From positions 62,001 to 126,000 of IMG/VR virus record IMGVR_UViG_3300021959_006017: a DNA stretch of 64,000 nucleotides. One strand, given 5' to 3'. The position numbers were made by a program, and so were the translations under genes. The notes below the pieces were generated by a model that saw only the letters and a program-made list of their open reading frames with translations, was not told the DNA's origin and ran no database searches. Numbering within the stretch: position 1 is the first letter of the stretch; each line of letters opens with the position of its first letter. Below, piece by piece: positions 5,555 through 64,000 of the stretch.

Positions 5555-5986
5555 GTGCTTAGACTTGCAAATGATGATTGGACATTAGGACATGTAAAAG
5601 ACGATCCAGTTCGTCCGCATTTACCCATGACGTGGCGTGTTACTAATGGACGCGAAGTTTACATATTAGAAGATGACTACGCAGGTATAGCAAGGGCAGT
5701 TGTGTGTGTTGCATACACTAATGGTATTGCTATTACTGAAGACGATCTAAACAACACACAAGATCCAGATACTGCTATGTTCTATACAGTGTGGAGTTAT
5801 GACAAAGGTGCAGGCAGAGAGATTATCTTTAGCACAGCAGAAGTAATCCAACGAGAGAAGCCACACATCAAACGCTACTGTACACTAAGTCCTTTAACTG
5901 AAATGGCAGAGAAGTTTCATTTGCGTAATGGTGCAAAGTTTTTACGCAAAGGCGATACATGTCAGAACTTTGAATACGAGGTATAG
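5555..5986 (+). CDS. hypothetical protein, possible GNAT-like fold
   Basis: FYTVWSYDKGAGR and TLSPLTEMAEKFHLRNGA resemble acetyltransferase motifs. Confidence 0.4.
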   Translation: MLRLANDDWTLGHVKDDPVRPHLPMTWRVTNGREVYILEDDYAGIARAVVCVAYTNGIAITEDDLNNTQDPDTAMFYTVWSYDKGAGREIIFSTAEVIQREKPHIKRYCTLSPLTEMAEKFHLRNGAKFLRKGDTCQNFEYEV

Positions 5987-5987
5987 T

Positions 5988-6701
5988 ATGACTGAAATGT
6001 TACGTGTTACAGAAGTTGAACACTACACAGATAGATTATTTCGAATAAGAACAGAAAGACCACAAAGCCACAGATTTACAGCTGGCGAGTTTACAATGAT
6101 AGGCATGGGTGACGATGACATCATGCGAGCCTATAGTTATACTAGTGGTCCGTATGACGAGTACTTGGAGTTTTATTCTATCAAAGTACCAGATGGTCCT
6201 CTTACTAGTAGACTACAACACATACAAGTAGGCGACGAGCTTGAAGTTGGAAACAGGCCCACAGGCACACTAACACTTGCTAATCTAGAACTAGGTGGCA
6301 ACTTGTGGTTGTTGGCAACAGGCACTGGTATTGCACCTTTTATTAGTTTGCTTAGAGATCCGGACACATACGATCAGTTCGACAAGATACATGTGGTATG
6401 GAGTGTGCGAACACAGCCAGAGCTACTGGCTTACAATAGTTTCTTACAAGAACTAGACATAGACTACACACCTGTTGTTACACAAGATCCAGACTGGCAA
6501 GAGTTGAATCAGCGTATCACAAAAATGATCAGTGCAGGTGTTATACTAGCCGGCGCACAGCCGGAAACAGATCGAGTAATGATCTGTGGCAGTATGCCAT
6601 TTAACACAGACGTCAAAGACATGCTCACAGCATGGGGTTGGCAAGAAGGTACTCGCAGAGTAGCAGGCACATTTGTACAAGAAAAAGCATTTGTACTATG
6701 A
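5988..6701 (+). CDS. fpr: ferredoxin--NADP(+) reductase (bacterial Fpr type)
   Basis: RAYSYTS, YSIKVPDGPLTS, ATGTGIAPFIS, MICGS motifs; start set at MTEML. Confidence 0.9.
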   Translation: MTEMLRVTEVEHYTDRLFRIRTERPQSHRFTAGEFTMIGMGDDDIMRAYSYTSGPYDEYLEFYSIKVPDGPLTSRLQHIQVGDELEVGNRPTGTLTLANLELGGNLWLLATGTGIAPFISLLRDPDTYDQFDKIHVVWSVRTQPELLAYNSFLQELDIDYTPVVTQDPDWQELNQRITKMISAGVILAGAQPETDRVMICGSMPFNTDVKDMLTAWGWQEGTRRVAGTFVQEKAFVL

Positions 6702-12324: not shown

Positions 12325-12401
12325 TGGTGGGCCCTGCGAGACTCGAACTCGCAACCTACGGATTATGAGTCCGGTGCTCTAACCAATTGAGCTAAGAGCC
12401 C
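12325..12401 (-). tRNA. tRNA with CAU anticodon, most likely tRNA-Ile2 (elongator Met not excluded)
   Basis: GGGCTCT acceptor, CT-CAT-AA loop, A73, encoded CCA; resembles ileX-type tRNAs. Confidence 0.88.
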
Positions 12402-24953: not shown

Positions 24954-25466
24954 GTGAGCCATACACTATTGCTCAATGCAGACGCACAACCAGTTTCATA
25001 CTTGCCCTTGTCCGCGATTCAGTGGAAAGAATCTATCACATACCTTTGGTTAGATAAAGTTACAGTACTAGAATGGTATGACGATTGGATAGTGCGCAGC
25101 GCCAGTTGGGAAACTAGAGTTCCTGCGGTTATTATGCTCAAAGAAATGCAACGGCGACGGCGCAAGCCTAGATTCTCTAAAACCAATCTATACGTTCGCG
25201 ACGTTTATACCTGCCAATACTGTAACACACCCTACACCCGAAACAACCTTACTCTAGATCATGTCATACCTATTTCCAAAGGTGGCCGCACCAACTGGGA
25301 AAACATTGTAGCCGCTTGTGGCCCTTGTAATACACGCAAAGGAAACAAAACGCATATGAAGCCTATCAAAGCCCCATATGCGCCAGATTATTATGATCTT
25401 GTAAACAAGCGTAAGCAACTAGACATGCACATAGCACACCCTAGTTGGGAAGCCTACCTAGCGTAG
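24954..25466 (+). CDS. HNH endonuclease
   Basis: RDVYTCQYC, TLDHVIPISKGG, WENIVAACGPCNTRKG. Confidence 0.92.
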   Translation: MSHTLLLNADAQPVSYLPLSAIQWKESITYLWLDKVTVLEWYDDWIVRSASWETRVPAVIMLKEMQRRRRKPRFSKTNLYVRDVYTCQYCNTPYTRNNLTLDHVIPISKGGRTNWENIVAACGPCNTRKGNKTHMKPIKAPYAPDYYDLVNKRKQLDMHIAHPSWEAYLA

Positions 25467-25874
25467 CCACCCTATCTTTTTACCTAACTTAGTACGCTTT
25501 TCGTGTTCTGCAACTGTACCTGGAAATCTCCAAGCCCAGATGGCTACCAGCAACATGAAACCACCGCTCCAGGCGACTGCTTTGATATTGCCAGTGGTGA
25601 ACCAAAGGAATGCTAACGAGGACGACATTACTATCACCATCGCATACTTGCCTTTGGTAGGAAATACTCTTTTCTGTACCCAGTTAGTTAGGAATGGGCC
25701 AAAGTATTTGTGATTGTATAACCAATCGTGCATCTTCTTGTTGCTCTTTGCAAAACAATATGCTGCAAACACAAGGAAGATACTAAATGGAATACCCGGA
25801 ACGACTACGCCGATGTATGCCATGCCTAAAGATAGGAAGCCAAGTCCCATCCACACGTATTTTTTAATATTCAT
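25458..25874 (-). CDS. YbaN (DUF454) family membrane protein
   Basis: GVVVPGIP...[23 protein letters not shown]. Confidence 0.85.
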
Positions 25875-27060
25875 TGAATACCTTTCTAAGTGCCTCTACT
25901 AGGTCACTCATCATCGCATCAGTATGTAGAGGTGTAGGAGCGATGCGTAGCCTCTCTGCACCAACATCCACAGTAGGGTAGTTAATGGGTTGGATGTATA
26001 TCCCATATTCGTCTAACAACCGATCACTCATAGCCTTGCACCGCTTCGCTTCGCGAACCATAACTGGTACAATATGAGTGCTGGCTGCATCGTGAACTTC
26101 TATACCTGCTTCGGTTAACATTCTAGTTAGCGTAGCAGCACGTTCTTGATGTTGTATCCTAAGTTCGTTATGATCCTTAAGATACTTGATAGATGCTAGG
26201 GCACCAGCACAAATAACCGGGCTCATGCTGGTAGTGAATATAAATCCACTGGCTACGCTGCGGATTGCGTCTATGACCGTTCCGTCACCGGCAATGTAGC
26301 CACCCTGTACACCATATGCCTTGCCCAGCGTTCCGTTGATTATATCAACACGGCCTTCCCCTATCTTTTCGCAGTAACCTGCGCCAGTTTCACCGTACAA
26401 TCCTACAGCATGTACTTCGTCTATATAGGTCATCGCACCGTAGCGATTAGCAAGGTCGCAGACTTGAGAAATAGGGCTTACGTCACCATCCATGCTATAC
26501 ACAGATTCAAAGACTATGCAGGGTTTAAGTCCTAGGTTAGTAACTTCCTGTAGTTTCTCTTCCAGGCTGCTCATATCATTGTGAAGCCATATACGTTTCT
26601 CTGCGCCACTGTGTCTAATACCCTGGATTAGTGAAGCATGATTCTTTGAATCTGATAGAAAACATATATCAGGTATGATACGTTTAAGTGCAACCAGTGT
26701 CCATTCATTAGCGACATAAGCACTTGTATACAGTAGAGCAGAAGGTTTTGTATGCAGTCGTGCAAGCTCTAACTCTAGTGCAACGTGATAATGGCTAGTG
26801 CCGCCAATATTTCTTGTACCCCCGCTTCCACTTCCTGTTTGGTCGAGGGCTGTGTGCATGGCATCAATAACAACTTTGTTTTGACCCATGCCTAGATAGT
26901 CGTTGCTACACCAGTTGACAATGTTCTTGATGGCATATGGTCCATACCATATACTCTTAGGAAAGTCACCACGCTCACGAAGAATATCGTTAAACACACG
27001 GTACTTGCCTGTTTGTTTAAGATCATCAATAACTTGTTCAAAGGGAGTTTTGTCTATCAT
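25864..27060 (-). CDS. hemA: 5-aminolevulinate synthase (PLP-dependent, C4 pathway)
   Basis: [65 protein letters not shown]. Confidence 0.95.
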
Positions 27061-41092: not shown

Positions 41093-41443
41093 ATGACTGA
41101 AAGAACACAAGAAGATATTGTTAAAAATATCGTTGAAGTATTAGAAAACTATGTTACTCCTGCTGTTGCTGCACACGGCGGCGCAGTAAATTTTGTAAGT
41201 TTTGAACAAGGTGTTGTACTATTAGAGATGAGCGGAGCATGTTCAGGATGTGCTGGAAGCACAATGACACTAAAGTATGGTGCTGAACAAATATTAACGC
41301 AAATGGTACCAGAAGTAATAGCCGTAGAAGGTTTTGATGATCCTTTCTCAGAGGTAGATCCTTTTTACACAGACCCATTCAGTATGCATGATTGGGATAT
41401 GATTAATATGGAAGATACTACTGATGAGCCTGATAACAAATAA
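41093..41443 (+). CDS. NifU/NfuA C-terminal domain Fe-S scaffold protein
   Basis: VTPAVAAHGG, MSGACSGCAGSTMTLKYG. Confidence 0.9.
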   Translation: MTERTQEDIVKNIVEVLENYVTPAVAAHGGAVNFVSFEQGVVLLEMSGACSGCAGSTMTLKYGAEQILTQMVPEVIAVEGFDDPFSEVDPFYTDPFSMHDWDMINMEDTTDEPDNK

Positions 41444-42707: not shown

Positions 42708-44318
42708 GTGGCAGTAGTTCAAATATCGAGAATACAAATCAGAAGAGGCAAAAAGAACTCTGGTACAGGATTACCTCAACTTGCATCAGGCGAGTTTGGG
42801 TGGGCAGTTGATTCTCAGGAACTATATATTGGCAATGGTTCAGTTTCAGAAGGTGCACCGTATGTAGGTAATACAAAGTTACTAAGCGAATACGATAACT
42901 TATTTGAGTTTGCAAATACATATGAATACAAATCAGGTACGAATATACAAACGGGCAGATCTCCAAATGACCCAGTTGTTAGAAACTTACAGCAAAGACT
43001 AGATGATAGGGTAAGCATACGAGCATTTGGTGCTCCGGGTGATAATACAGATCAAACTGTAGCATTGCAACGTGCTATTGATCAACTATACTTAAATGCT
43101 AGTAACAAAGGTACTCCTCAGTCAAGAGTAGAACTTATACTTGAACCGGGTGAATACACTATTTCTAGCACAGTTTATCTTCCGCCATATGCAACTATAA
43201 GAGGCGCTGGTTCAGAAAAAACCATTATAAATGCCGGAAACCATATTGCTTTCCAAACAGTAAACGAAACAAGTACTCCTGGATCTTATGCAAGTGATGC
43301 AGTAAGTACAACTTTAAATCAAGCACGAAATATTATAATGACAGGTATGACTATTAAAGGAGTACATACTGGTCTTGTGTTACAAAGTTGTAAAGATAGT
43401 TACTTTGAAGATATTATTTTTGCCGGTACATGGGTATTAGGAGATAGCGTAAGTGATAACTCAATAGGTATTAGATTAAACAGTTTAAGTACAGCAGTTA
43501 CATCTCAAAATAATAGATTTAAAAATGTTTATATTCATAATAAAAGTTATGCAGTTGCAAGCGACTGGGACATTAGAGAAAACTATTGGGAAAACTGTAG
43601 ATTTGAAATATTAAATAAAGGCATAGTTTTCGGCGAAAACACAGTACTAGGTACGAGCGGACAACTTACAGGACCGACAAAAAACTCTGTTTCACACAGT
43701 GTTTTTGATGACATAGAACAACAAGCTATACAAGTTTTGGCTGGTCCTAATAATGCAAGTGAGTCAAACAAGTTCTTAAATGTTGGTAACAACGGCGGAA
43801 GCGATGATCTTAACGAAGCACCAGTTATTCAATACGACGACCAAGGTTGTACTTCTTCAAACGATTACTTCCAGCGTTCAGAGTTTTTAGGGTATGACGC
43901 TGCCTATCTAGTTAATATTCCCTACAATACAGAAATAGCCGGAGATATTATTACACAAATAAACACTCCACACACTATTAGCATTGGAGAAGCAGGTATT
44001 CCTATTAAGTTATTTAAACTGCCTGCTGCCGACAATGGTAAAGGTTACACAATAGATTATATCTATAAAAGTAACTCAGTTACTGCTATGAGAAGCGGTA
44101 CTATGAAGATAGCAGTTGATCCTGTAAACAATAATCATATTTTATCAGACGAATATGAATATTTAGGTGACGGTGCCTATCAAGAAAGTTTAGTATTCCA
44201 ATCACAAAATTATGATGAAAACAGTGACGGATCGGTTGACACAATCGCCATTATGATGTTAAACTCTACTAGCGGAGATGAAGCAACATTAACGTACACT
44301 GTAAAATATAAGTCATAA
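42708..44318 (+). CDS. virion tail/baseplate protein with pectate-lyase-like beta-helix
   Basis: ISRIQIRRG...LASGEFGW N-terminus; VSIRAFGAPGD..DQT.ALQRAI; beta-helix repeats. Confidence 0.7.
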   Translation: MAVVQISRIQIRRGKKNSGTGLPQLASGEFGWAVDSQELYIGNGSVSEGAPYVGNTKLLSEYDNLFEFANTYEYKSGTNIQTGRSPNDPVVRNLQQRLDDRVSIRAFGAPGDNTDQTVALQRAIDQLYLNASNKGTPQSRVELILEPGEYTISSTVYLPPYATIRGAGSEKTIINAGNHIAFQTVNETSTPGSYASDAVSTTLNQARNIIMTGMTIKGVHTGLVLQSCKDSYFEDIIFAGTWVLGDSVSDNSIGIRLNSLSTAVTSQNNRFKNVYIHNKSYAVASDWDIRENYWENCRFEILNKGIVFGENTVLGTSGQLTGPTKNSVSHSVFDDIEQQAIQVLAGPNNASESNKFLNVGNNGGSDDLNEAPVIQYDDQGCTSSNDYFQRSEFLGYDAAYLVNIPYNTEIAGDIITQINTPHTISIGEAGIPIKLFKLPAADNGKGYTIDYIYKSNSVTAMRSGTMKIAVDPVNNNHILSDEYEYLGDGAYQESLVFQSQNYDENSDGSVDTIAIMMLNSTSGDEATLTYTVKYKS

Positions 44319-44777: not shown

Positions 44778-47081
44778 ATGTCTAACGGAACAATGATCGT
44801 CAAGCGTGACGGTACAAAAGAACATCTCAACATTGACAAGATACATTTTGTTGTTGAGGAAGCCTGTAAAAATCTAGCAGGTGTAAGCAGCAGTCAAATA
44901 GAAATGAACGCAAATATACAGTTTTATGATGGTATGAGTACTGCTGAGATACAAGAAATTCTTATCCGTAGTGCAAACGATCTTATTTCATTAGACACAC
45001 CAAACTATCAGTTTGCGGCAGCAAGACTTCTTAGTTATGGTTTATACAAACAAGTGTTTGGACAATACTCAGCATTATCACTTGAAAAAATGATTAAAAA
45101 GAATATCGATCGCGGTGTTTATGATGCTGAGATTCTTGAAAAGTATTCCTCCGAAGAAATCGAGCGTATGGAATCATACCTCCATCATAAGCGTGATGAA
45201 AACTTTACCTACGCAGGTCTGCGCCAGGTAGTAGACAAATATCTTGTACAGGATAGAAGCTCGGGTGAGATTTTTGAAACTCCACAGCATATGTATATGA
45301 TGATTGCAGCAACTCTGTTTGCTAACTATCCTAAAGAAGAACGTATGCATTATGTAAGGAGATATTACGATGCGACCTCACTTTTTAAACTCAATATCCC
45401 AACGCCGGTCATGGCCGGAGTGCGTACTCCAGTTAGGCAGTTTGCCTCTTGTGTGCTTGTTGACAGTGACGACACACTCGATTCGATCTTTGCGTCAGAC
45501 ATGTCCATCGGTAGATACACAGCTCAAAGAGCTGGTATCGGTATTAACGCAGGACGTATCAGAGGAGTCAACTCAAGAATCAGAGGCGGTGAAGTAGCAC
45601 ACACAGGCATTATTCCGTTCCTTAAAAAGTTTGAATCAACTGTACGTTGCTGTACACAGAATGGTGTGCGTGGCGGATCAGCTACAACACACTTCCCGTT
45701 TTGGCATCAAGAGATTGAAGACATCCTTGTGCTGAAAAACAACAAAGGTACAGAAGACAATCGTGTTCGTAAACTAGACTACTCAATCCAACTTAACAAA
45801 ACAATGTACGAACGCCTCCTTAGCGGAGGTGAAATTACCTTGTTTTCACCGCATGATGTTCCAGGACTATATGAAGCATACTTTGGTGACCCGGATGCAT
45901 TTAAAGAGCTGTATGAGCAGTATGAGCGTAAAACAAGCATTAAAAAGAAAAAGATTGATGCGATGGAACTGTTCTCAGCACTAATCAAAGAACGTGCAGA
46001 AACAGGACGTATCTACATTATGAATGTTGATCACTGCAACACACATAGCAGTTTCAAAGACACAGTGTACATGAGTAACCTATGTCAAGAGATTACACTA
46101 CCTACAAAGCCACTACAGCACATTGATGACGAGAATGGAGAGATTGCTCTATGTATTTTAAGTGCTATCAATGTAGGCATTATCAAAGACCTAGATGATC
46201 TAGAAGAACTATGTGATCTTGCAGTTCGTGCGCTAGAAGAGATTATTGACTATCAACACTATCCTATTAAGGCAGCAGAGATTTCAACTAAAGCAAGACG
46301 TTCACTAGGTATTGGTTACATTGGACTAGCACACTATCTTGCTAAGAACAAAGTAAACTACGCAGACGCAGAAGCATGGAAACTAGTACATGATCTAACA
46401 GAAGCATTCCAGTACTATTTGCTAAAAGCATCAAACAATCTTGCTAAAGAGCGTGGTGCTTGTGAGTACTTCGACCGCACTAAATACAGTGACGGCATCC
46501 TTCCTATTGACACATACAAGAAGGATGTAGATAATATTGTAGCAAATAACTTAAACTATGATTGGGATACTCTTAGACATAGCATCAAGGAACACGGGCT
46601 CAGGCACTCAACTTTGTCCGCACAGATGCCATCAGAAAGCAGTTCCGTTGTGTCGAACGCAACAAACGGAATCGAGCCACCTAGAGGCTACCTGTCCGTT
46701 AAGAAGTCCAAGAAAGGGCCTCTTAAGCAGATTGTTCCACAGTATCAAACTCTAAAGAATCACTATACATTACTATGGGATATGCCTAGTAATGAAGGTT
46801 ATATCAATACAGTTGCGGTAATGCAAAAGTTTTTTGATCAGGCTATTAGCGGTAACTGGTCATACAACCCAACACAGTATCCAGACAATGAGGTACCGAT
46901 GAGTGTAATGATGCAAGACTTGTTAAACACTTATAAGTATGGATGGAAAACAAGTTACTATCAAAACACTTACGATTATAAAACCGATCCAAGTGATATT
47001 GAAGAAGAAAAGCCACAAGTAGAACTGCCTCAGGGACTGTCTACTGAAGATGACGAAATGTGTGAAGCCTGTGCAATTTAA
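44778..47081 (+). CDS. nrdA: ribonucleotide reductase class Ia alpha subunit with ATP-cone
   Basis: IVKRDG ATP-cone, PTPVMAG, FASCVL, SNLCQEI, MPSESSS, KTSYY, C-terminal CEAC. Confidence 0.96.
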   Translation: MSNGTMIVKRDGTKEHLNIDKIHFVVEEACKNLAGVSSSQIEMNANIQFYDGMSTAEIQEILIRSANDLISLDTPNYQFAAARLLSYGLYKQVFGQYSALSLEKMIKKNIDRGVYDAEILEKYSSEEIERMESYLHHKRDENFTYAGLRQVVDKYLVQDRSSGEIFETPQHMYMMIAATLFANYPKEERMHYVRRYYDATSLFKLNIPTPVMAGVRTPVRQFASCVLVDSDDTLDSIFASDMSIGRYTAQRAGIGINAGRIRGVNSRIRGGEVAHTGIIPFLKKFESTVRCCTQNGVRGGSATTHFPFWHQEIEDILVLKNNKGTEDNRVRKLDYSIQLNKTMYERLLSGGEITLFSPHDVPGLYEAYFGDPDAFKELYEQYERKTSIKKKKIDAMELFSALIKERAETGRIYIMNVDHCNTHSSFKDTVYMSNLCQEITLPTKPLQHIDDENGEIALCILSAINVGIIKDLDDLEELCDLAVRALEEIIDYQHYPIKAAEISTKARRSLGIGYIGLAHYLAKNKVNYADAEAWKLVHDLTEAFQYYLLKASNNLAKERGACEYFDRTKYSDGILPIDTYKKDVDNIVANNLNYDWDTLRHSIKEHGLRHSTLSAQMPSESSSVVSNATNGIEPPRGYLSVKKSKKGPLKQIVPQYQTLKNHYTLLWDMPSNEGYINTVAVMQKFFDQAISGNWSYNPTQYPDNEVPMSVMMQDLLNTYKYGWKTSYYQNTYDYKTDPSDIEEEKPQVELPQGLSTEDDEMCEACAI

Positions 47082-47139
47082 TGGTTGACAGGCAACCACA
47101 GTTAGTATATAGTAGTATAACACAACAATAGGATTAACG

Positions 47140-48243
47140 ATGTCAAAGACAGTATTCAATAGAGAAAAAGTAGACTTTACAAAGCAAAATATGTTCTTCG
47201 GAGCAGATCAAAACACACAGCGTTACGACACATTTAAGTTTCCTGTGTTCGATAAACTTAACCAAACTATGCTTGGTTACTTTTGGCGACCTGAAGAAGT
47301 AAGCCTGCAGAAAGATAGAGCAGATTATGCTAACTTCCGTCCTGAGCAGAAGCACATCTTTACTGCTAACTTAAAGTATCAAACACTACTTGACTCAGTA
47401 CAAGGACGCGGACCATGTCTAGCGTTTCTTCCACACTGTTCACTTCCTGAACTAGAAGGTTGTATTGTTACTTGGGACTTCTTTGAAACTATTCACTCAC
47501 GTTCTTATACACACATTATGAAAAATGTGTATCCAGATCCAAGTGAAGTTTTTGACACAATCCTTGATGATGAAAAGATTATCGAACGTGCAGTAAGTGT
47601 AACCAAACACTATGATGCATTTACTGAAGCAGTAGATGCATTTATTCACCGCGGTGAAGGCTCAATGCATGAAGTTAAAAAGAAACTTTACCTTGCTATG
47701 ATGACTGTAAATATCTTAGAAGGTCTTCGTTTCTACGTGTCATTTGCTTGCACATTTGGCTTTGGCGAACTAAAACTAATGGAAGGTAGTGCTAAGATTA
47801 TTAGCCTTATCGCCCGTGATGAAGCACAACATCTAGCACTAAGCACACACGTTCTTAAACTTTGGGCACAAGGTAAAGACGATCCAGAAATGGCTAAGGT
47901 TGCTAAAGAGTGCGAAGCAGAAGTATATGACTTATGGCGCGAATGTGTTGAAGAAGAAAAGGCTTGGGCAGAATACTTGTTCAAAGACGGTTCTATGATC
48001 GGATTGAATACTAACCTATTGAATCAATATGTTGAATACATTGCTAACCGTAGACTTAAAGCATTAAACTTAGATGCTATCTTTGATGCACCAGTAAACA
48101 CTAACCCACTACCTTGGACACAGCATTGGTTGTCAAGTTCAGGCTTGCAGGTTGCACCACAAGAAACAGAAGTAGAGTCCTATATTATTGGAGGCATCAA
48201 GCAAGATGTCGATAAAGAAAAACTTAAAGGATTTAGTTTATGA
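47140..48243 (+). CDS. nrdB: ribonucleotide reductase class Ia beta subunit
   Basis: FWRPEE, DSVQGR, ETIHSRSY, LEGLRFYVSF, RDEAQH, APQETEVESY. Confidence 0.96.
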   Translation: MSKTVFNREKVDFTKQNMFFGADQNTQRYDTFKFPVFDKLNQTMLGYFWRPEEVSLQKDRADYANFRPEQKHIFTANLKYQTLLDSVQGRGPCLAFLPHCSLPELEGCIVTWDFFETIHSRSYTHIMKNVYPDPSEVFDTILDDEKIIERAVSVTKHYDAFTEAVDAFIHRGEGSMHEVKKKLYLAMMTVNILEGLRFYVSFACTFGFGELKLMEGSAKIISLIARDEAQHLALSTHVLKLWAQGKDDPEMAKVAKECEAEVYDLWRECVEEEKAWAEYLFKDGSMIGLNTNLLNQYVEYIANRRLKALNLDAIFDAPVNTNPLPWTQHWLSSSGLQVAPQETEVESYIIGGIKQDVDKEKLKGFSL

Positions 48244-52445: not shown

Positions 52446-52658
52446 ATGACGTATTTTGAACTCAAAGAAGCTAATCGCTTTTACTGGCTAGTCAAAGGTC
52501 AACTCATTCCTGAATCTTGGAACGAAAAAGATATTCGCGACACATATGAATCTTACTTTAGACGCTTGTGGGGCAACCACGAAAGAGCAGTATATGGCGA
52601 GTTAGGATTTGAAGCAGCCTGGGCAAAAACGCCAAGCAAAAAAGCGGTTGACATCTAA
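52446..52658 (+). CDS. hypothetical protein
   Basis: TAAATA 5 nt upstream. Confidence 0.6.
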   Translation: MTYFELKEANRFYWLVKGQLIPESWNEKDIRDTYESYFRRLWGNHERAVYGELGFEAAWAKTPSKKAVDI

Positions 52659-52680
52659 AGTATAAACTGTTATAAATAAC

Positions 52681-52920
52681 CTGTAGGCGTTACAAAGCGT
52701 ATTTGGACTCCGGGGCGGTACCGGACGCCTCCACCATAAGCACTCTATCCCAACCTGACGAGGGCGGATCGTAAAGAACTAAACAGAGTGCTTATGATGG
52801 GGGCGAAATAGGTTTCGACAGGTAGGCAAGTTTACAAAACACAAATGCAAACGATAACTTTGCACCTGAGTTAGCCCTAGCGGCATGATTCACGGGGTTA
52901 GTCCACCTTGTTACCAAACG
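52681..52920 (+). ncRNA. ssrA: two-piece (circularly permuted) tmRNA, tag ANDNFAPELALAA
   Basis: T-arm plus CGCCTCCACCA ends 52736; 62-nt intervening hairpin; GGGGGCG 5' end at 52799 giving a G3.U pair; tag frame 52847-52888; promoter TTGACA at 52648. Outer boundaries approximate. Confidence 0.9.
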
Positions 52921-52923
52921 GCT

Positions 52924-52960
52924 AGAAAGGTGTTGCAGAGATGTAACACCTTTCTTCTTT
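52924..52960 (+). terminator. rho-independent terminator after ssrA
   Basis: agaaaggtgtt/aacacctttct stem plus T-run. Confidence 0.75.
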
Positions 52961-58856: not shown

Positions 58857-59250
58857 GATAATAACAAGTCCTGATAGAGTTTATGACGCTAGTTCAGATA
58901 TATTGTTAATCAATCCTAGTCAAGAAAGATTGTCTCAGTTTCAAGAAGAGTTTTTAGCAACTACAAACATATCTTGTAATGTCTATTTGTATGAACATAG
59001 GACATATGATCCTAGTAATTTTGCTTGGTTATTGAGTGTTTTTAGAAGTAGTAAACTTACTATTTTAGATTTAGACAACCTTTCTCCTCACCTAAAAGAC
59101 TTTATTGCATACTTTCTTGCGCAACCAACAACTTTTTGGTTGACAAATATAGAGAAACCAGTATATAATCATATTAGTAAGAATAAGATATACTCGTTTG
59201 ATTTCTTACAAACCTTAGGAGGTAACTTTGAGAAGACAACACTCGAATAG
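58798..59250 (+). CDS. hypothetical protein
   Basis: IITSPD, WLL, YFLA pattern. Confidence 0.6.
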   Translation: MRNKMNQASLTELDELNKIKIITSPDRVYDASSDILLINPSQERLSQFQEEFLATTNISCNVYLYEHRTYDPSNFAWLLSVFRSSKLTILDLDNLSPHLKDFIAYFLAQPTTFWLTNIEKPVYNHISKNKIYSFDFLQTLGGNFEKTTLE

Positions 59251-59476
59251 TAAAGACCGTGTTAAAACAGGTCTTACAGTTGAAGTCCGTAATGGCGACT
59301 TCGCTTACGCATTGCGTAAGTTTAAAAAGAAAGTTCAAGAAGATGGTATTCTTCAAGAACTACGTGAAAGACAACACTACACCAAACCAAGCGAAAAACG
59401 CAAAAAAGCAAAAGCAGCAGGTCGTGCCCGCTGGTTGAAAAAACAACGTAAACAGGAACAAGAACGAGGCTTCTAA
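59228..59476 (+). CDS. rpsU: 30S ribosomal protein bS21
   Basis: [19 protein letters not shown]...[19 protein letters not shown]. Confidence 0.92.
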
Positions 59477-60618
59477 TGCGCATCGAACAAGACGTTAAAC
59501 TTGACTACAAGGACGTACTCATACGGCCTAAGCGTTCAACACTAGGATCACGCAAGGAAGTAGACCTAGAACGAGGTTACACATTCCGTAACTATACTTC
59601 AGACTTTCCAGATAATATAGAAGAACGTCATTGGCGTGGCATTCCTCTTATGGCTGCTAACATGGATGGCGTTGGCACATTTGAAATGGCTGACCAACTT
59701 GCAACTGCAGGTATCTTCACTTGCTTAGTTAAAACTTATAGCGTAGAACAACTAGTAGAGTACTTTGATACAGATATGTATGAACGTACAAACTATGTCG
59801 CTATGAGCATTGGCATTAATGGCAGTGACTGGAACAAGTTTAAAAGTGTATATGAACGTGCAGACGGTAATCTAAAATACGTTTGCATTGACGTAGCAAA
59901 CGGATATTCAAATCGCTTCCGTGACTTTGTTGCAGAAATGCGTAAGACATATCCAAATATTGTAATCATCGCTGGAAATGTAGTAACTGGCGAAATGACG
60001 GAGGAACTTATTCTTGCTGGCGCAGATATTATTAAAGTGGGCATCGGCCCTGGAAGTGTTTGTACAACACGGATCCAAACTGGTGTTGGTTACCCTCAGC
60101 TTTCCGCTGTTATTGAGTGCGCTGATGCTGCTCACGGTCTTGGTGGCCATATCATTGCGGATGGTGGCTGCACTACTCCTGGCGATGTAGCCAAAGCATT
60201 TGCCGCTGGAGCAGACTTTGTAATGCTAGGTGGTATGCTTGCCGGACACGATGAAGGCGGCGGCGAAGTAATCACAAAGCACTATGCAAACAATGAATAC
60301 ACAAGACAAGATGATGGTACTTATGTGCCACACTTTGAACAAAGACACTTTGTACAGTTTTACGGCATGAGCAGTAAAAGTGCAAATGAAAAGCATTTCG
60401 GAGGATTGAAAGATTATCGTTCCTCGGAAGGCAGGACAGTCCTTGTACCCTACAGGGGATCTGTGGGTATAACCGTACAAGAAATACTCGGGGGTATTAG
60501 GTCTGCCTGTACGTATGCTGGAGCAGTGCGCTTGAAGCACCTATCTAAGTGTACAACATTTGTTCGTTGTACTCAAACTCATAACTCTGTTTATGAAAAA
60601 AGCACGATTGGCAAATGA
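59476..60618 (+). CDS. guaC: GMP reductase
   Basis: [54 protein letters not shown]. Confidence 0.94.
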
Positions 60619-60629
60619 TAAATAACTGT

Positions 60630-60707
60630 GTACATTATAAGAGTTATAATGTACTAGGATGCCGAAAGGATCCTAATATTAATCTTGCTTATTAAAGGAG
60701 AAAAAAC
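60630..60707 (+). promoter_or_regulatory. ROSE-like RNA thermometer in the hsp20 5' UTR
   Basis: Two upstream hairpins, then TCTTGCT (60683-89) pairing with AGGAGA SD with a bulged G. Confidence 0.7.
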
Positions 60708-61187
60708 ATGACAAGACTAACAACTCTAGACCTACCACACTTTCATAGAGCAACTATTGGCTTTGACAGACTGTTTAACGAATTAGAAACACAATTTGCA
60801 AATAGTCCTAATGGAAATGGTTATCCCCCATACAACATTGCACAAATCAACGAAGACGAGTATATGATCTCTGTTGCCGTTGCTGGCTTTGGTATGGATA
60901 ATCTGTCTGTAGAAAAAGACAAGAACGTTCTTAAGATTGAAGGTATCGCTCCTAAGGGAGGCGAACATGTCAACTACCTGCACAAAGGTATTGGCGGTCG
61001 CAACTTCCGTAGAGAGTTTACACTTGCTGACCACGTAGAAGTTGTCAGTGCTGGACTTGACCTAGGTATGCTTAATGTGCACCTAAAGCGTGAAGTTCCA
61101 GAAGAACTACAACCTAAGAAGATTGAAATCACAGACTGGAATGGTCATGTGACAGAAGCAATCGACGTAGACGCAAACGAAAAGTAA
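60708..61187 (+). CDS. small heat shock protein (Hsp20/IbpA-like)
   Basis: IGFDRLF, YPPYNI, AVAGF, YLHKGI..RNF.REFTLA. Confidence 0.94.
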   Translation: MTRLTTLDLPHFHRATIGFDRLFNELETQFANSPNGNGYPPYNIAQINEDEYMISVAVAGFGMDNLSVEKDKNVLKIEGIAPKGGEHVNYLHKGIGGRNFRREFTLADHVEVVSAGLDLGMLNVHLKREVPEELQPKKIEITDWNGHVTEAIDVDANEK

Positions 61188-61232
61188 ACAGTCTAGGGGG
61201 AGTTTTATACTCCCCCAATTTAAGGAACAGGT

Positions 61233-61532
61233 ATGACAACTGAAGTAGTTATTGACGAAAAAATCAAACGTGAAATTAAAGAACCTAACAACTATAATGT
61301 AATCATGTTAAATGATGACGGAACTCCGATGGAGTGGGTAGTACAAGTACTACAAGAAATCTATCGACACAGCCTTACGTCAGCTCAGGAAATAATGTTA
61401 ACTATTCACAATGAGGGATCAGCAGTCGTTGGCACTTATAAGTACGAAATAGCAGAACAAAAAGCAGTAGAAACTGTTAATGCAAGTCGCAATCAAGGGT
61501 TTCCACTGATATGTAAGGTTGAGGAAGAATGA
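61233..61532 (+). CDS. clpS: ATP-dependent Clp protease adaptor ClpS
   Basis: YNVIMLNDDGTPMEWV, MLTIHNEG. Confidence 0.92.
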   Translation: MTTEVVIDEKIKREIKEPNNYNVIMLNDDGTPMEWVVQVLQEIYRHSLTSAQEIMLTIHNEGSAVVGTYKYEIAEQKAVETVNASRNQGFPLICKVEEE

Positions 61533-62071
61533 GCTTAAAAGATTTAACTTGGGAACATCATAAAAATGCAGAACGTCAAGAGTTTGTTAAAGAACTCATG
61601 GGCGGCAAAATAACAAATGAAAGATATGCAACATATCTTTTCAATCAACATCCAGCATATAATACACTAGAAATGCTAGGCATGATGCATGGGTTATTTG
61701 ATGGGGTGCCTGAGCTAAGGCGAGCACCACGCATACATGAAGACTACCAAGAGCTTTGGAGCGATGACTTTAAACAGCCTGCATTATGTAAAAGTGTACG
61801 TGAATATATGGATCACTTAATGAGTATTAAAGATGATGCTGAAAAACTAATGGCACACATCTATGTAAGACATATGGGAGATCTAAGTGGCGGACAAATG
61901 ATTGCAAAACGTGTTCCTGGCAAAGGATTATTTTATCAGTTTAATCGTCCAGTAGATGAACTTAAAGAACATATACGTTCTAAAATCAATGACGACATGG
62001 CAGACGAAGCAAAACTATGCTTTGACTTTGCTACAAGATTATTTCAAGAGATGGCAGGATTAACAGAATGA
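61529..62071 (+). CDS. heme oxygenase (HemO/Ho1-like)
   Basis: LKDLTWEHH..AE, HIYVRHMGDLSGGQMI, EAKLCF. Confidence 0.92.
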   Translation: MSLKDLTWEHHKNAERQEFVKELMGGKITNERYATYLFNQHPAYNTLEMLGMMHGLFDGVPELRRAPRIHEDYQELWSDDFKQPALCKSVREYMDHLMSIKDDAEKLMAHIYVRHMGDLSGGQMIAKRVPGKGLFYQFNRPVDELKEHIRSKINDDMADEAKLCFDFATRLFQEMAGLTE

Positions 62072-62760
62072 GTGTTATCTGGGATAGACTTATAGAATGT
62101 CAAAATGAAATCATAAATATTTTTAATGAAAAGGCAAAAGAAGTACAAGAAGACGGTCTTGATTATTTTAACCGTCCAGATAGCGGTTGGATTAATCGTG
62201 TTTGGTCCAACGATAGTATCAGACGTGCTCACATCGATGTAGTTGACGCTAGAGATACAAAGGGTTTATGGATGATGCATGTATGCATATTTCCAACACT
62301 TGACAATCCTGCACCTATATACGGTTTCGATGTAATCGCAGGCAAGAACAAGATGACTGGTGCGTTCCATGACTTTTCACCAAGTGCTGATCCTGACCAC
62401 CCTATGATACAAGGTTACTACGAAAGCGTAGAAGACTTTATTCCTAAGAAGCAACGTGAACTGCCTGAGTGGGCTCGCAACATCTTTACAGATAAAATGC
62501 TTGCCGCAGGAAATGTAACCACAGAAGAAGAAGCAGTTGCTATTATTGAGATTGCTCTAAACAATCTTCATGCTTATTTTGATGAAGTAGGTCTTACTGA
62601 TAAAGAAGGTGATCCGACTATTGTCGCTGCATGTCAAGACTATTACTGTCACAATCAGCAACAGAATCCACACACTCCTAATGTTATGAAAAGTCTAGGG
62701 CTTCCTGAAGAAGATGTAGACAAGTTCTGCACAGACATGCTGTTTCCTAAACTAGCATAA
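62068..62760 (+). CDS. ferredoxin-dependent bilin reductase (PcyX/PcyA family)
   Basis: RRAHIDV, WMMHVCIFP, PIYGFDVI, HDFSP, LPEWA.IF, QQQNPHT. Confidence 0.85.
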   Translation: MSVIWDRLIECQNEIINIFNEKAKEVQEDGLDYFNRPDSGWINRVWSNDSIRRAHIDVVDARDTKGLWMMHVCIFPTLDNPAPIYGFDVIAGKNKMTGAFHDFSPSADPDHPMIQGYYESVEDFIPKKQRELPEWARNIFTDKMLAAGNVTTEEEAVAIIEIALNNLHAYFDEVGLTDKEGDPTIVAACQDYYCHNQQQNPHTPNVMKSLGLPEEDVDKFCTDMLFPKLA

Positions 62761-62783: not shown

Positions 62784-64000
62784 ATGAGATTTGCTGACTT
62801 TAAACTTGTAGAAACAAAAATGCTCAAAGAAGAAGCACTGCCTAGTAATGTTATGGCTGCTAAAGAAATGGGCAAAACAAACCCAGCAGGCGATAGAAAA
62901 TATGTTATTGCTATCGCAAAAAGCATGAGAGCTAATAAGCCTTTTGCATTTGTTCCACAAGGTAAAACAGTAAAAGCCAAAGAAGGTACTTTTGGTATTA
63001 TTGATAAGATCACTTACAATGGCGCAGAAATGAGTAGCGAAGAATGGGAAACATGGGCAAACAATCCTAAGACAGATGTAGCAGAGATTGTTAAAACTAC
63101 TTTTACTGTTGACGGCGAAGAATATGCTCTTAACAAAATGTGGAAAACAGAAGCAGCAACAGGTGCTATGAGCATTAACAAAGGTGATGCTGCTGAGGCT
63201 ATTCTTGGCGCAAGTATTACAGCAAAGTTTGACAAAGGCGGAAAGCCTATTAAGCCAGTTGACATTGTAAACGTTCTTAAGAACGTTGTTTCACAAGGCA
63301 CAATAGATGGTGAAACTAACTATGAAACCGCAGGCATTGAAGATGATAATTATTTGTTCAAACTAACACTTAATGCTACTTCAATGAAATCATTGAGAAT
63401 GTGGATTGAAGAAGACGATCCAATGGCTGCTCCAAAAGGATTTAAGATTGTTGATGAAGGTGTTGAAGCACAAACTATCAAAGACCTGCAGATGCAAATC
63501 AAAGCAGCAGTAGAATATGCTAATAGAAATGAACGTTGTATTACAGCAGTTGAAAAAGCAAAAGCAGATCCTAAAAAGAACCAAGTTCAAATCCTAAGTG
63601 ACGGCGGCGATGCTACACAGCAAAGTGTAACTAAAGTTGACCTTAAGATCACATATGACGGACAAGTAACTAGACTACTGAGTCTTAAAGCAGGAAGTGT
63701 TAAGCAGTTTGGACAACTAAGTGGTGCTGAATATGAAACCGCAGCAGGCTTCTTTGAAAGTGTTCTTAAGTTTAGATTGCCCGACAAACTAGCAACTACA
63801 TTTGGATTTAAGCCTAGCACAGATCCTGACTACAAAGACTACAACTACGGTAAAGGACCTTTTGAAAAACTATACAGTGAAATGGCTAAACAAGCCACGG
63901 AGTATACAAAGGGTGACAATACGAAAAAAGAATACAAACTAGTACAAAATGTTTATGATGGTATTAACTATCATGCTACTAGAGAAGAAGAAGGTGTAAC
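62784..64000 (+). CDS. hypothetical protein, truncated by the window edge (putative head-internal)
   Basis: MRFADF...LKEEA start after TAAATA; start checked by eye, absence from the ORF track is consistent with no stop before the edge. Confidence 0.65.
   Translation, partial: MRFADFKLVETKMLKEEALPSNVMAAKEMGKTNPAGDRKYVIAIAKSMRANKPFAFVPQGKTVKAKEGTFGIIDKITYNGAEMSSEEWETWANNPKTDVAEIVKTTFTVDGEEYALNKMWKTEAATGAMSINKGDAAEAILGASITAKFDKGGKPIKPVDIVNVLKNVVSQGTIDGETNYETAGIEDDNYLFKLTLNATSMKSLRMWIEEDDPMAAPKGFKIVDEGVEAQTIKDLQMQIKAAVEYANRNERCITAVEKAKADPKKNQVQILSDGGDATQQSVTKVDLKITYDGQVTRLLSLKAGSVKQFGQLSGAEYETAAGFFESVLKFRLPDKLATTFGFKPSTDPDYKDYNYGKGPFEKLYSEMAKQATEYTKGDNTKKEYKLVQNVYDGINYHATREEEGV

What the first reader, a model, noticed from the sequence alone, without database searches (positions are those of the whole stretch)
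61529..62760. Tetrapyrrole-to-bilin pathway in a phage of a probably non-cyanobacterial host
Seen: heme oxygenase plus ferredoxin-dependent bilin reductase (in an operon with hsp20 and clpS). Elsewhere in the window are ALA synthase (25864), adjacent YbaN (25458), ferredoxin-NADP reductase (5988) and an NfuA-type Fe-S scaffold (41093). Established: hemO-pcyX cassettes from uncultured marine phages make phycoerythrobilin and were attributed to alphaproteobacterial hosts; ALAS is the alphaproteobacterial C4 entry enzyme. Inference: the phage boosts heme supply, electrons and Fe-S clusters to make a bilin whose acceptor is unknown (iron release, antioxidant or light-sensing role).
Basis: partly seen in the sequence, partly recalled or inferred. 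Interest (0 to 1): 0.6.

Follow-up and report, generated by a model that had tools for sequence, protein, structure and literature searches.

The report
Jumbo phage heme-to-bilin gene set
A roughly 350-kb phage from estuarine water carries intact-looking genes to make the haem precursor ALA, to split haem, and to reduce the product to the pink bilin phycoerythrobilin; the same gene set has already been published for aquatic phages, so this is a well-supported new member, not a new kind of system.

Summary
Window 61529-62071 encodes a compact canonical heme oxygenase. Window 62068-62760 encodes a ferredoxin-dependent bilin reductase of the PcyX type, not PcyA. It scores 272.8 bits against the solved PcyX 5OWG and 54.7 against PcyA, and it carries the PcyX residue pattern Asp57/His71/Asp88/Pro201.

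clpS, hemO and pcyX are joined by ATGA stop/start overlaps. hsp20, GMP reductase and S21 lie upstream. This order is kept in 74 of 80 related IMG/VR loci, and dN/dS is about 0.04.

A true ALA synthase (TIGR01821, 549 bits) lies 35 kb away and lacks the heme-feedback histidine. An FPR-type ferredoxin-NADP reductase is kept across the lineage. The NifU-like gene is not universal.

The phage is not a pelagimyophage. It belongs to a lineage of about 357 kb whose terminase is nearest PA5oct and Atu_ph07.

A cyanobacterial host is unlikely. There is no psbA or phycobiliprotein gene, and the phage tmRNA is of the alphaproteobacterial two-piece type. No ferredoxin or known bilin-binding protein is encoded.

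Chen 2020 and Wegner 2024 already describe hemO + pcyX + valaS in large aquatic phages.

Two details appear new. The clpS-hemO-pcyX coupling is tight. valaS is almost always linked to a DUF454 membrane protein.

The parts
59140..59169 (+). Sigma-70-like promoter, TTGACA-18-TATAAT, 12 of 12 matches, upstream of S21 and the gene row
   Evidence: sequence read. This is a consensus match only; function was not tested.
59228..59476 (+). Ribosomal protein S21 homologue, first gene of the row
   Evidence: PF01165, 7e-18. Kept in the related loci.
59476..60618 (+). GMP reductase (GuaC type)
   Evidence: NF003470, 527 bits against a cut-off of 397. Kept upstream of hsp20 in relatives.
60708..61187 (+). 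Small heat-shock protein, IbpA-like Hsp20
   Evidence: PF00011, 7.5e-14; phrog_432, 2e-34; NF008013, 127 bits, which is below its cut-off.
61196..61216 (+). Hairpin (7-bp G+C-rich stem, 7-nt loop) between hsp20 and clpS, with no T tail
   Evidence: Read from the sequence. The terminator scan did not call it.
61233..61532 (+). ClpS, the N-degron adaptor of ClpAP; its stop overlaps the hemO start (ATGA)
   Evidence: PF02617, 1.7e-28. In the alignment to E. coli ClpS 1mbu it keeps N27, D28, D29, T31, M33, M55, H59, E72 and K77, which match N34, D35, D36, T38, M40, M62, H66, E79 and K84. dN/dS is 0.041.
61529..62071 (+). Heme oxygenase HemO, 180 aa, canonical HO-1 family, compact form
   Evidence: PF01126, 1.2e-20. 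Proximal His11 and the distal GDLSGG motif at 117-122 are present; H11, G117, D118, G121 and G122 are invariant in 38 relatives. The AlphaFold model has pLDDT 94.7 and aligns to HmuO, Synechocystis HO-1 and rat HO-1 at TM 0.82-0.86. dN/dS is 0.049.
62068..62760 (+). PcyX-type ferredoxin-dependent bilin reductase (predicted phycoerythrobilin synthase); its start overlaps the hemO stop (ATGA)
   Evidence: Solved PcyX 5owg: 2.6e-80, 272.8 bits. PcyA 2d1e: 1.1e-13, 54.7 bits. Asp57/His71/Asp88/Pro201 is the PcyX pattern (pattern taken from PMC13446030 and PMC11480375). In the tree it sits in the PcyX clade, separated from cyanophage PcyA with 100% SH-aLRT support. dN/dS is 0.039.
62784..64000 (+). 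Hypervariable 544-aa protein of unknown function directly downstream of pcyX (it runs on to genome position 126418, past the window end)
   Evidence: Only 25% identical to its counterpart in L022, while the flanking genes are 95-97% identical. Only viral hypothetical relatives were found.
25864..27060 (-). 5-aminolevulinate synthase (valaS), the Shemin-pathway entry enzyme
   Evidence: TIGR01821, 549 bits against a cut-off of 338. Solved ALAS 7x98, 1e-132; 2bwn, 6e-121. PLP lysine Lys247 is kept. The position of R. capsulatus His342 is Arg340, and there is no C-terminal Cys.
25458..25874 (-). DUF454 (YbaN-like) small membrane protein, overlapping the end of valaS
   Evidence: PF04304, 2e-29. 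It lies on the same strand near valaS in 75 of 80 IMG/VR valaS loci; the other 5 are cut at the contig end. It was not found beside ALAS in the bacterial loci.
5928..6701 (+). Bacterial FPR-type ferredoxin/flavodoxin-NADP(+) reductase
   Evidence: PF00175 and PF00970. Best solved relative is R. capsulatus FNR 2bgi, 1.2e-59; P. aeruginosa FPR 2qdx, 8.6e-49. Homologues are present in G001 (43%), G002 (75%) and G003 (63%).
41093..41443 (+). NifU/Nfu-domain protein (116 aa); not a full NfuA
   Evidence: PF01106, 2.9e-22; TIGR03341, only 50 bits against a cut-off of 269. Present in G002, G003 and G005. Absent from the complete relative G001.
52644..52928 (+). Two-piece (permuted) tmRNA of the alphaproteobacterial type; a clue to the host
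   Evidence: RF01849, 62.9 bits (gathering score 50); RF04321, 77.2 bits (gathering score 47). The alpha model is the best of its clan. The tag reads ANDNFAPELALAA.

Best explanation
This is an auxiliary metabolic gene set of a jumbo myovirus of about 357 kb that infects a non-cyanobacterial proteobacterium, most likely an alphaproteobacterium. The set runs tetrapyrrole metabolism from ALA to a bilin inside the infected cell.

Supported by sequence, structure model or comparison:
[quoted passage not shown] It has lost the histidine used for heme feedback.
- HemO is a complete canonical heme oxygenase, so it should open heme to biliverdin IX-alpha, CO and Fe2+.
- The reductase is PcyX-type and keeps the PcyX-specific aspartate. 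The predicted product is therefore phycoerythrobilin (PEB) via 15,16-dihydrobiliverdin, not phycocyanobilin.
- clpS, hemO and pcyX are translationally coupled. They sit in a conserved row S21-guaC-hsp20-clpS-hemO-pcyX behind a consensus sigma-70-like promoter.

Inferred:
- Host enzymes carry ALA on to heme.
- NADPH electrons enter through the phage FPR and reach HemO and PcyX through a host ferredoxin. For HemO they may pass directly, as I recall was reported for the P. aeruginosa FPR/HemO pair.
- PEB itself is the selected end product. An ALAS paired with a heme oxygenase gives no net iron gain. The PEB-determining aspartate is invariant in all 63 relatives. PcyX is the most conserved protein of the module.

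Open: what PEB does. My best guess, at about 0.4, is a protective or regulatory small molecule in a stressed, non-photosynthetic infected cell. This would fit the neighbouring proteostasis genes: sHsp, ClpS, phage ClpP and tmRNA.
For: - PcyX identity. Residue rule.
- HemO integrity.
- ALAS identity and loss of the feedback histidine.
- Coupling and promoter.
- Conserved order in 74 of 80 loci.
- Purifying selection, dN/dS 0.04-0.05.
- ALAS together with PcyX in G000, G001 (complete) and G002.
- FPR kept in the lineage.
- Lineage and genome size.
- Host clues: no Photo_RC or Phycobilisome match; alpha-type tmRNA; terminase relatives infect Pseudomonas, Agrobacterium, Sinorhizobium and enterobacteria; a curli CsgF/CsgG module lies downstream.
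- Published enzymology of relatives: PMC11480375.
Against: - No enzyme from this clade has been assayed. It is only about 52% identical to the characterised PcyX EBK42635.
- One phage FDBR of the PcyA/PcyX group (CB_2) unexpectedly made PCB.
- No ferredoxin (Fer2) is encoded in G000-G005.
- No ferrochelatase was found.
- No GAF, phytochrome or phycobiliprotein-like acceptor was found.
- The Nfu gene is dispensable in the complete relative G001.
- The host is not identified. G001 carries a beta-type tmRNA, so hosts may differ within the lineage.
- No RNA run was found, so expression is not shown.
- The physiological role rests on neighbourhood and on a conservation argument only.
Confidence: 0.72

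Rival explanations
1. Iron salvage. HemO serves to free iron from host heme for the phage's many iron enzymes (class Ia RNR, 2OG-Fe(II) oxygenases, Fe-S proteins). PcyX only removes biliverdin so that HemO can turn over. ClpS with ClpP would feed hemoproteins into degradation.
For: - Iron-dependent genes are nearby: RNR, a 2OG-Fe(II) oxygenase and an Nfu domain.
- ClpS is coupled to hemO, and a phage ClpP is present.
- The literature discusses iron supply as one possible role.
Against: - The same genomes carry valaS. That pushes carbon and iron into heme, so there is no net iron gain.
- The PEB-specifying aspartate is invariant in all 63 relatives, and PcyX is more conserved than HemO. Neither is expected if any biliverdin sink would do.
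Confidence: 0.2
2. Chromophore supply. PEB is made for a bilin-binding protein of the host, or for an unrecognised phage protein (phytochrome, BBAG-type globin or other). This would give the infected cell a light-sensing or regulatory response.
For: - A product-specific residue is strictly conserved.
- The CB_2 phage enzymes can load a phytochrome in E. coli.
- BBAGs are proposed as partners of pre-PcyA enzymes.
Against: - No GAF or phycobiliprotein-like gene was found in G000, in the complete G001, or in G002.
- No FDBR was found in 401 sampled Hyphomicrobiales genomes. This shows only that hosts of that order rarely handle such bilins.
- PEB is a poor photoswitching chromophore for phytochromes (my own knowledge).
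Confidence: 0.2
3. Cyanophage light-harvesting gene. The reductase is a PcyA or PebS analogue that maintains the phycobilisomes of a cyanobacterial host.
For: Pfam and NCBIfam name the family after PcyA. JGI annotates relatives as phycocyanobilin:ferredoxin oxidoreductase.
Against: - Only 54.7 bits to PcyA against 272.8 to PcyX.
- Asp, not Glu, at the PcyA Glu76 position.
- Separated from cyanophage PcyA in the tree.
- No psbA or phycobiliprotein genes.
- Alpha-type tmRNA.
- The terminase lineage is that of phages of Proteobacteria.
- ALAS and curli genes are not traits of cyanobacteria, which use the C5 route (my own knowledge).
Confidence: 0.03
4. Inert passengers. The genes are decaying or non-functional hitch-hikers on a large genome.
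For: HemO is short (180 aa), and its Pfam match covers only two thirds of the model.
Against: - dN/dS is 0.04-0.05.
- Catalytic residues are invariant in 38 and 63 relatives.
- The HO fold is complete at pLDDT 94.7.
- The gene order is kept in 74 of 80 loci, down to 68% PcyX identity.
Confidence: 0.03

Closest known systems
Phage hemO-pcyX cassette from marine metagenomes (Ledermann et al. 2016, 2018; PcyX_EBK42635, PDB 5OWG)
   Same: hemO lies adjacent to an FDBR of the PcyA/PcyX group. The Asp/His/Asp/Pro residue pattern is the same. The match is 272.8 bits over the full length.
   Different: Only about 52% identical (hand count from the alignment). Here the pair is fused to clpS and sits in a genome of about 357 kb. 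Samples are mainly estuarine, with close relatives apparently in lakes. Published PcyX was said to be marine only.
valaS + hemO + pcyA/X in aquatic phage contigs, 'broken cassette' type (Wegner et al. 2024, PMC11480375; Chen et al. 2020 large freshwater phages CB_2, TP6_1)
   Same: All three genes are on one phage genome, with hemO and the FDBR adjacent and valaS apart. vAlaS lacks the heme-feedback ligand. Large genomes are already in their list, for example 324,995 bp and 527 kb.
   Different: The CB_2 reductase lacks the PcyX aspartate and makes PCB; this one keeps it. The paper assigns the marine contigs to pelagimyophages by a gp13 tree, whereas this lineage has a PA5oct/Atu_ph07-like terminase. 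ClpS, Hsp20 and DUF454 are not mentioned there.
Pelagibacter phage Mosig EXVC030M (MT647606)
   Same: It is the only cultured phage with a clear homologue pair: HemO 46% and PcyX 53%, adjacent. It also carries S21, Hsp20, an alpha-type tmRNA and a very similar RNR (71% and 63%).
   Different: Its genome is 141 kb, T4-like, GC 33%. Only 39 of 346 ORFs are shared. It has no ALAS and no ClpS beside hemO. It encodes a 2Fe-2S ferredoxin and a putative ferrochelatase, which this lineage lacks.
ho1 + pebS / pcyA of cyanomyoviruses (P-SSM2, P-RSM4, S-TIM4)
   Same: Phage-encoded heme oxygenase and a four-electron FDBR. PebS makes the same product, PEB.
   Different: A different FDBR lineage, or the PcyA pattern Glu/His/Asp. 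About 31% identity over half the protein. Cyanobacterial hosts with phycobilisomes.
hemO-pcyA-alaS island with bphP in Bradyrhizobium sp. ORS278
   Same: The only reported bacterial locus combining Shemin ALAS with bilin synthesis.
   Different: That island has a PcyA (Glu) that makes PCB and an adjacent phytochrome acceptor. No acceptor is present here.

Membership tests
PcyX (FDBR, PcyA/PcyX or 'AX' clade) | Fe_bilin_red fold and family | tested here: met
   PF05996, 65 bits against a cut-off of 31.
PcyX (FDBR, PcyA/PcyX or 'AX' clade) | Closer to characterised PcyX than to PcyA or PebS | tested here: met
   5owg 272.8 bits; PcyA 54.7 bits; no PebS match at E<=1. In the tree it is separated from cyanophage PcyA at 100% SH-aLRT. 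That tree lacks PebS, cyanobacterial PcyA and EBK42635 itself.
PcyX (FDBR, PcyA/PcyX or 'AX' clade) | Asp in place of PcyA Glu76 (PcyX Asp55), plus the His/Asp pair and Pro at the PcyA Asp220 position | tested here: met
   Asp57/His71/Asp88/Pro201. All 63 relatives have D/H/D/P; the two cyanophage PcyA have E/H/D. Rule taken.
PcyX (FDBR, PcyA/PcyX or 'AX' clade) | Four-electron reduction of biliverdin to PEB via 15,16-DHBV | not testable with these tools
   Needs an enzyme assay with HPLC.
Canonical heme oxygenase (HO-1/HmuO family) | Proximal His, distal-helix GDxxGG, all-helical HO fold | tested here: met
   His11 and GDLSGG; invariant in 38 relatives; model TM 0.82-0.86 to HmuO and HO-1.
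Canonical heme oxygenase (HO-1/HmuO family) | Heme cleaved to biliverdin IX-alpha | not testable with these tools
   Shown for relatives only (PMC11480375).
5-aminolevulinate synthase (TIGR01821) | Score above the equivalog cut-off and above KBL/BioF; PLP lysine present | tested here: met
   549 bits against a cut-off of 338. KBL and BioF models score below their own cut-offs. Lys247 corresponds to RcA Lys248.
Phage valaS/hemO/pcyX set, 'broken cassette' (Wegner 2024) | All three genes on one phage genome, hemO-FDBR adjacent, valaS separate | tested here: met
   valaS at 25864-27060, hemO-pcyX at 61529-62760, 35 kb apart. The same holds in G001, about 29 kb apart across the contig ends.
Pelagimyophage (T4-like phages of SAR11) | T4-like core shared with HTVC008M/Mosig; genome 132-164 kb | tested here: not met
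   39 of 346 ORFs hit Mosig and the terminase is 32% identical. The terminase is nearest PA5oct at 53.5%. The complete relative is 357,559 bp. Size range from PMC7029224.
ClpS N-degron adaptor | ClpS fold, N-degron pocket residues, ClpA-contact residues | tested here: met
   PF02617 at 98.7 bits. Residues aligned to E. coli ClpS are kept. Their roles are from my own knowledge of the E. coli protein.
NfuA Fe-S carrier | N-terminal A-type domain plus C-terminal Nfu domain; score above cut-off | tested here: not met
   116 aa with the Nfu domain only. TIGR03341 scores 50 bits against a cut-off of 269, and matches model positions 105-179 only.
Bacterial FPR (ferredoxin/flavodoxin-NADP reductase, subclass I) | FAD_binding_6 plus NAD_binding_1 domains; nearest to solved FPRs | tested here: met
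   The E. coli-type equivalog NF008178 scores 124 bits against a cut-off of 390, so it is not that exact orthologue.

The most novel reading that the evidence does not exclude
The two tight linkages found here may mark unrecognised partners of tetrapyrrole enzymes.

(1) DUF454/YbaN is a small membrane protein with two invariant histidines. It accompanies viral ALAS in essentially every locus with enough flank, but was not seen beside bacterial ALAS. It could handle ALA, porphyrin or heme at the membrane.

(2) ClpS is translationally coupled to hemO-pcyX. It could steer ClpAP, together with the phage ClpP, towards hemoproteins or towards a tetrapyrrole-pathway enzyme. That would tie proteolysis to heme breakdown.
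Probability: 0.15. Interest if true: 0.6.

Novelty: new member of a known kind. Interest (0 to 1): 0.3.

Why it matters
The case gives a well-documented example of a non-cyanobacterial jumbo phage that carries the start (ALAS) and the end (HemO, PcyX) of the route to a bilin. It shows that this is a conserved trait under purifying selection in a widespread lineage of about 350 kb, found in estuarine, marine and lake samples. At least 219 IMG/VR contigs carry this PcyX and at least 593 carry a valaS relative.

It sharpens the open question of what a 'pink pigment' does in cells without phycobilisomes. The strict conservation of the PEB-specifying residue, together with the pairing with ALAS, argues that the bilin itself is wanted and that iron is not the only goal.

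It also offers two testable leads: the DUF454 partner of ALAS and the clpS coupling. And it gives concrete constructs for enzymology on a PcyX clade that appears to reach into low-salinity water.

Tried and rejected
Searches that found nothing:
- Fer2 ferredoxin in G000-G005: none.
- GAF, Phycobilisome (which would also catch BBAG-like globins) and Photo_RC in G000, G001 and G002: none.
- Ferrochelatase in G000-G003: none.
- FDBR in 401 sampled Hyphomicrobiales genomes, sought as Bradyrhizobium-type references for the tree: none.
- A true ALAS in GenBank phages: none; the best hits are KBL/BioF at 34% or less.

Host and expression:
- Host naming from ALAS neighbours failed. The 77-81% hits lie on short contigs of MAGs from unrelated taxa (Vibrio, Crocinitomicaceae, Polynucleobacter), most likely mis-binned phage DNA. 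True bacterial ALAS is 58% identical or less.
- No RNA runs hold the operon, so expression could not be checked.

Methods and minor leads:
The quick IQ-TREE result is reported instead.
- The weak ROSE_3 hit upstream of hsp20 (25.8 bits, gathering score 43) is not supported by the fold, which leaves the ribosome-binding site open.
- Literature searches for marine jumbo phages with these genes, and for phage ClpS, gave nothing useful.
- The pelagimyophage assignment was considered and rejected.
Full report
**1. What is at the coordinates**

The + strand of 59228-62760 holds a tight row of genes:
- S21, 59228-59476
- GMP reductase, 59476-60618
- an IbpA-like Hsp20, 60708-61187
- ClpS, 61233-61532
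- a heme oxygenase, 61529-62071 (PF01126, 1.2e-20)
- a ferredoxin-dependent bilin reductase, 62068-62760 (PF05996, 1e-17)

clpS/hemO and hemO/pcyX overlap by ATGA. A G+C-rich hairpin without a T tail lies between hsp20 and clpS. A 12-of-12 sigma-70-like promoter lies at 59140-59169. No terminator-like site was found on the + strand.

- ALA synthase, 25864-27060 (-): TIGR01821, 549 bits against a cut-off of 338.
- DUF454/YbaN, 25458-25874 (-).
- an FPR-type ferredoxin-NADP reductase, 5928-6701.
- a 116-aa Nfu-domain protein, 41093-41443. This is not a full NfuA.

**2. Which reductase it is**

The protein matches the solved PcyX_EBK42635 (5OWG) at 2.6e-80 (272.8 bits). It matches PcyA only at 1.1e-13 (54.7 bits). 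PebS does not appear at all.

Published diagnostic positions are Glu76/His88/Asp105/Asp220 in PcyA and Asp/His/Asp/Pro in PcyX. The Asp (Asp55 in the numbering of PcyX_EBK42635) is held responsible for making PEB rather than PCB (PMC13446030; PMC11480375).

This protein has Asp57/His71/Asp88/Pro201. All 63 PcyX-like relatives I collected have the same pattern. The two cyanophage PcyA have Glu.

A quick maximum-likelihood tree separates the PcyX group, including this protein and Mosig's, from cyanophage PcyA with 100% SH-aLRT support. That tree lacks PebS, cyanobacterial PcyA and EBK42635 itself, because I had no referable sequences for them.

Identity to 5OWG is about 52% by my hand count of the alignment. 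Identity to Mosig's PcyX is 53%.

**3. Are the enzymes intact?**

- HemO is short (180 aa) but complete. It has proximal His11 and the distal GDLSGG motif. H11, G117, D118, G121 and G122 are invariant in 38 relatives. An AlphaFold model reaches pLDDT 94.7 and superposes on HmuO, Synechocystis HO-1 and rat HO-1 at TM 0.82-0.86.
- Against a relative with 91-96% protein identity (L022), dN/dS is 0.041 for ClpS, 0.049 for HemO and 0.039 for PcyX.
- ALAS keeps the PLP lysine (Lys247). It has Arg at the position of R. capsulatus His342 and no C-terminal cysteine. This fits the published note that many viral AlaS lack the heme-feedback site.
- ClpS keeps the residues that align with the N-degron pocket and the ClpA-contact residues of E. 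coli ClpS. The roles of those residues are from my own knowledge.

**4. What phage this is**

The window is part of a 236,751-bp IMG/VR record that CheckV rates 67% complete.

Only 39 of my 346 called ORFs hit Pelagibacter phage Mosig. The large terminase is nearest to:
- Pseudomonas phage PA5oct, 53.5%
- Agrobacterium phage Atu_ph07, 51%
- Sinorhizobium phage Phosso, 48%
- Rak2-like phages, 44%

A relative, G001, is 357,559 bp and rated 100% complete by CheckV. It shares 216 of the 346 ORFs at a median of 57% identity, in the same order. Its two contig ends join up on my map, so the genome is about 357 kb and the contig looks whole.

Pelagimyophages are 132-164 kb (PMC7029224). This is therefore a different, jumbo lineage.

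Runs that hold the operon are mostly estuary metagenomes, with some marine, freshwater and salt-lake ones. One 96%-identical PcyX sits on a contig whose name follows the scheme of the German lake data set used by Wegner et al..

**5. How conserved the arrangement is**

In 80 IMG/VR loci with 68-100% PcyX identity:
- 74 keep the order ...S21-GMP reductase-Hsp20-ClpS-HemO-PcyX.
- One is cut at the contig end.
- Five carry pcyX alone, beside a family-B DNA polymerase gene.

HemO and ClpS are much more diverged than PcyX in many relatives. In L104, for example, PcyX is 85% identical but HemO 51% and ClpS 56%.

ALAS and PcyX co-occur in G000, G001 and G002. The FPR is present in G001, G002 and G003. 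The Nfu gene is in G002, G003 and G005 but not in the complete G001.

Not found:
- Fer2 ferredoxin, in G000-G005.
- Ferrochelatase, in G000-G003.
- GAF, phycobiliprotein-like or psbA genes, in G000-G002.

**6. Host**

A cyanobacterial host is unlikely. The evidence:
- There are no photosynthesis genes.
- The nearest cultured relatives by terminase, listed in section 4, all infect Proteobacteria.
- A curli CsgF/CsgG module follows downstream.
- The window encodes a two-piece tmRNA at 52644-52928. Its best model in the clan is alpha_tmRNA, at 62.9 bits against a gathering score of 50. Its tag begins ANDN, which I recall as typical of alphaproteobacterial tags.

Mosig, a SAR11 phage, also carries an alpha-type tmRNA. 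G001 carries a beta-type one at 108 bits, so hosts may differ within the lineage. I could not name the host.

**7. How it most likely works**

Supported by sequence, model or comparison: a feedback-free ALAS, a complete heme oxygenase, a PcyX with the PEB-type active site, translational coupling, and purifying selection.

Inferred:
- Host enzymes convert ALA to heme.
- The phage FPR passes NADPH electrons on, through a host ferredoxin or directly to HemO. I recall the direct route being reported for P. aeruginosa FPR and HemO, and 2qdx is among the close solved relatives.
- PcyX reduces biliverdin to PEB.

I argue that the bilin itself is the selected product. An ALAS plus a heme oxygenase gives no net iron. 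The PEB-specifying aspartate never varies. PcyX is the best-conserved member of the module.

The role of PEB stays open. The neighbours (sHsp, ClpS, a phage ClpP at genome 146019-146633, tmRNA) point towards stress and protein quality control rather than light harvesting. This is inference from the neighbouring genes only.

**8. Comparison with what is known**

- hemO-pcyX cassettes that make PEB were described from marine viral metagenomes (Ledermann 2016, 2018, as cited).
- Large freshwater phages with adjacent ho1 and pcyX-like genes plus ALAS were listed by Chen et al..
- Wegner et al. 2024 described valaS with hemO and pcyA/X as full, broken or single cassettes. They tested the CB_2 enzymes and discussed the same unknown role. 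Their contig table includes phage contigs of 179,038 and 324,995 bp from the same lake data set, which also carry the three genes apart.

The finding is therefore a new member of a known kind. I did not find the following in those papers:
- The clpS coupling and the hsp20 neighbourhood.
- The near-constant valaS-DUF454 pair.
- The terminase-based placement of this PcyX clade in a PA5oct/Atu_ph07-like jumbo lineage, rather than among pelagimyophages.
- PcyX-pattern enzymes in estuarine and apparently freshwater samples.

**9. The valaS-DUF454 pair**

In 80 IMG/VR valaS loci, 75 carry a DUF454 gene on the same strand within 2.6 kb. It lies directly downstream in 45. The five without it are cut off at the contig end. 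G001 keeps the pair as well.

Among the ALAS loci taken from GTDB genomes, DUF454 appears only on the three phage-like contigs. It does not appear beside the bacterial ALAS genes.

The protein has at least one strongly hydrophobic segment, and His49 and His55 are kept in at least 95% of relatives. A DUF454 gene is reported as induced by iron restriction in Avibacterium (PMC7970244). Its function is unknown.

**10. Verdict**

It is not new, so interest is modest. The two linkages and the unassayed PcyX clade are the parts worth a bench test.

Noticed in passing
window 52644-52928 (+); L207:15184-15629 (-); L005:11505-11808 (-): The phage encodes a two-piece tmRNA of the alpha type (RF01849, 62.9 bits; tag ANDNFAPELALAA). 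The 357-kb relative G001 has a beta-type one (RF01850, 108 bits). Mosig has an alpha-type one. ARAGORN missed the one in the window.
   Followed up: partly
window 25458-27060 (-); loci L209-L288: valaS is accompanied by a DUF454/YbaN membrane-protein gene in 75 of 80 IMG/VR loci (the other 5 are truncated). The pair was not seen beside bacterial ALAS. An HNH endonuclease gene (24954-25466) often lies next to the pair.
   Followed up: partly
window 44778-48243 (+): The class Ia ribonucleotide reductase subunits are 71% and 63% identical to those of Pelagibacter phage Mosig, but only 41% and 39% to those of the syntenic relative G001. This suggests the RNR genes were replaced from a pelagiphage-like gene pool.
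   Followed up: partly
window 62784-64000 and on to genome 126418 (L289:85-1719): The 544-aa protein directly after pcyX is hypervariable. It is 25% identical to its counterpart in L022, while the flanking genes are 95-97% identical. It has only viral hypothetical relatives.
   Followed up: partly
L289:1757-5553 (genome 126456-130252, just past the window end): A curli-type secretion module (CsgF, CsgG, a FecR-domain protein and a curlin-repeat protein) follows. It is conserved in relatives, as reported for pelagimyophages.
   Followed up: partly
genome 146019-146633 (L011:19-633): The phage and its relatives G001-G003 encode a strong ClpP homologue (205 bits). No Clp ATPase gene lies next to it. 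With ClpS, Hsp20, tmRNA and S21 this forms a proteostasis and translation toolkit. Relative L022 also has GroES/GroEL between the GMP reductase and Hsp20.
   Followed up: partly
loci L104-L182 compared with window 61233-62760: Within the module PcyX stays 68-85% identical, while HemO and ClpS fall to 41-60% in many relatives. The module looks mosaic or unevenly constrained.
   Followed up: no
L167, L168, L169, L171, L172: Five related phage contigs carry pcyX (71-72% identical) without any recognisable hemO, clpS or hsp20 within 10 kb. In L169 it lies beside a family-B DNA polymerase and a MazG-like gene.
   Followed up: partly
L023, L025, L026, L185-L187: MAGs labelled Vibrio, Crocinitomicaceae and Polynucleobacter hold short contigs with phage-type ALAS (77-81%), DUF454 and PcyX-pattern FDBRs. 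These are most likely phage DNA binned into bacterial genomes.
   Followed up: partly
window 60619-60716 (+): Two stable hairpins lie in the gap between the GMP reductase and hsp20 genes (fold z-score -3.9). There is also a weak ROSE_3 hit (25.8 bits, below the gathering score). The fold does not hide the ribosome-binding site.
   Followed up: partly
window 12151-12401 (-): Three tRNA genes lie in a row: Arg-tct, Leu-taa and Met-cat. Mosig also carries Arg-tct and Leu-taa.
   Followed up: no
window 1285-1770 (+): A DUF6580 membrane protein (117 bits) is encoded near the primase, helicase and FPR genes. Its function is unknown.
   Followed up: no
window 42708-44318 (+): A 536-aa protein carries an Mtd_N (major tropism determinant N-terminal) domain and a pectate-lyase-like domain. 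It is probably a tail fibre or depolymerase.
   Followed up: no
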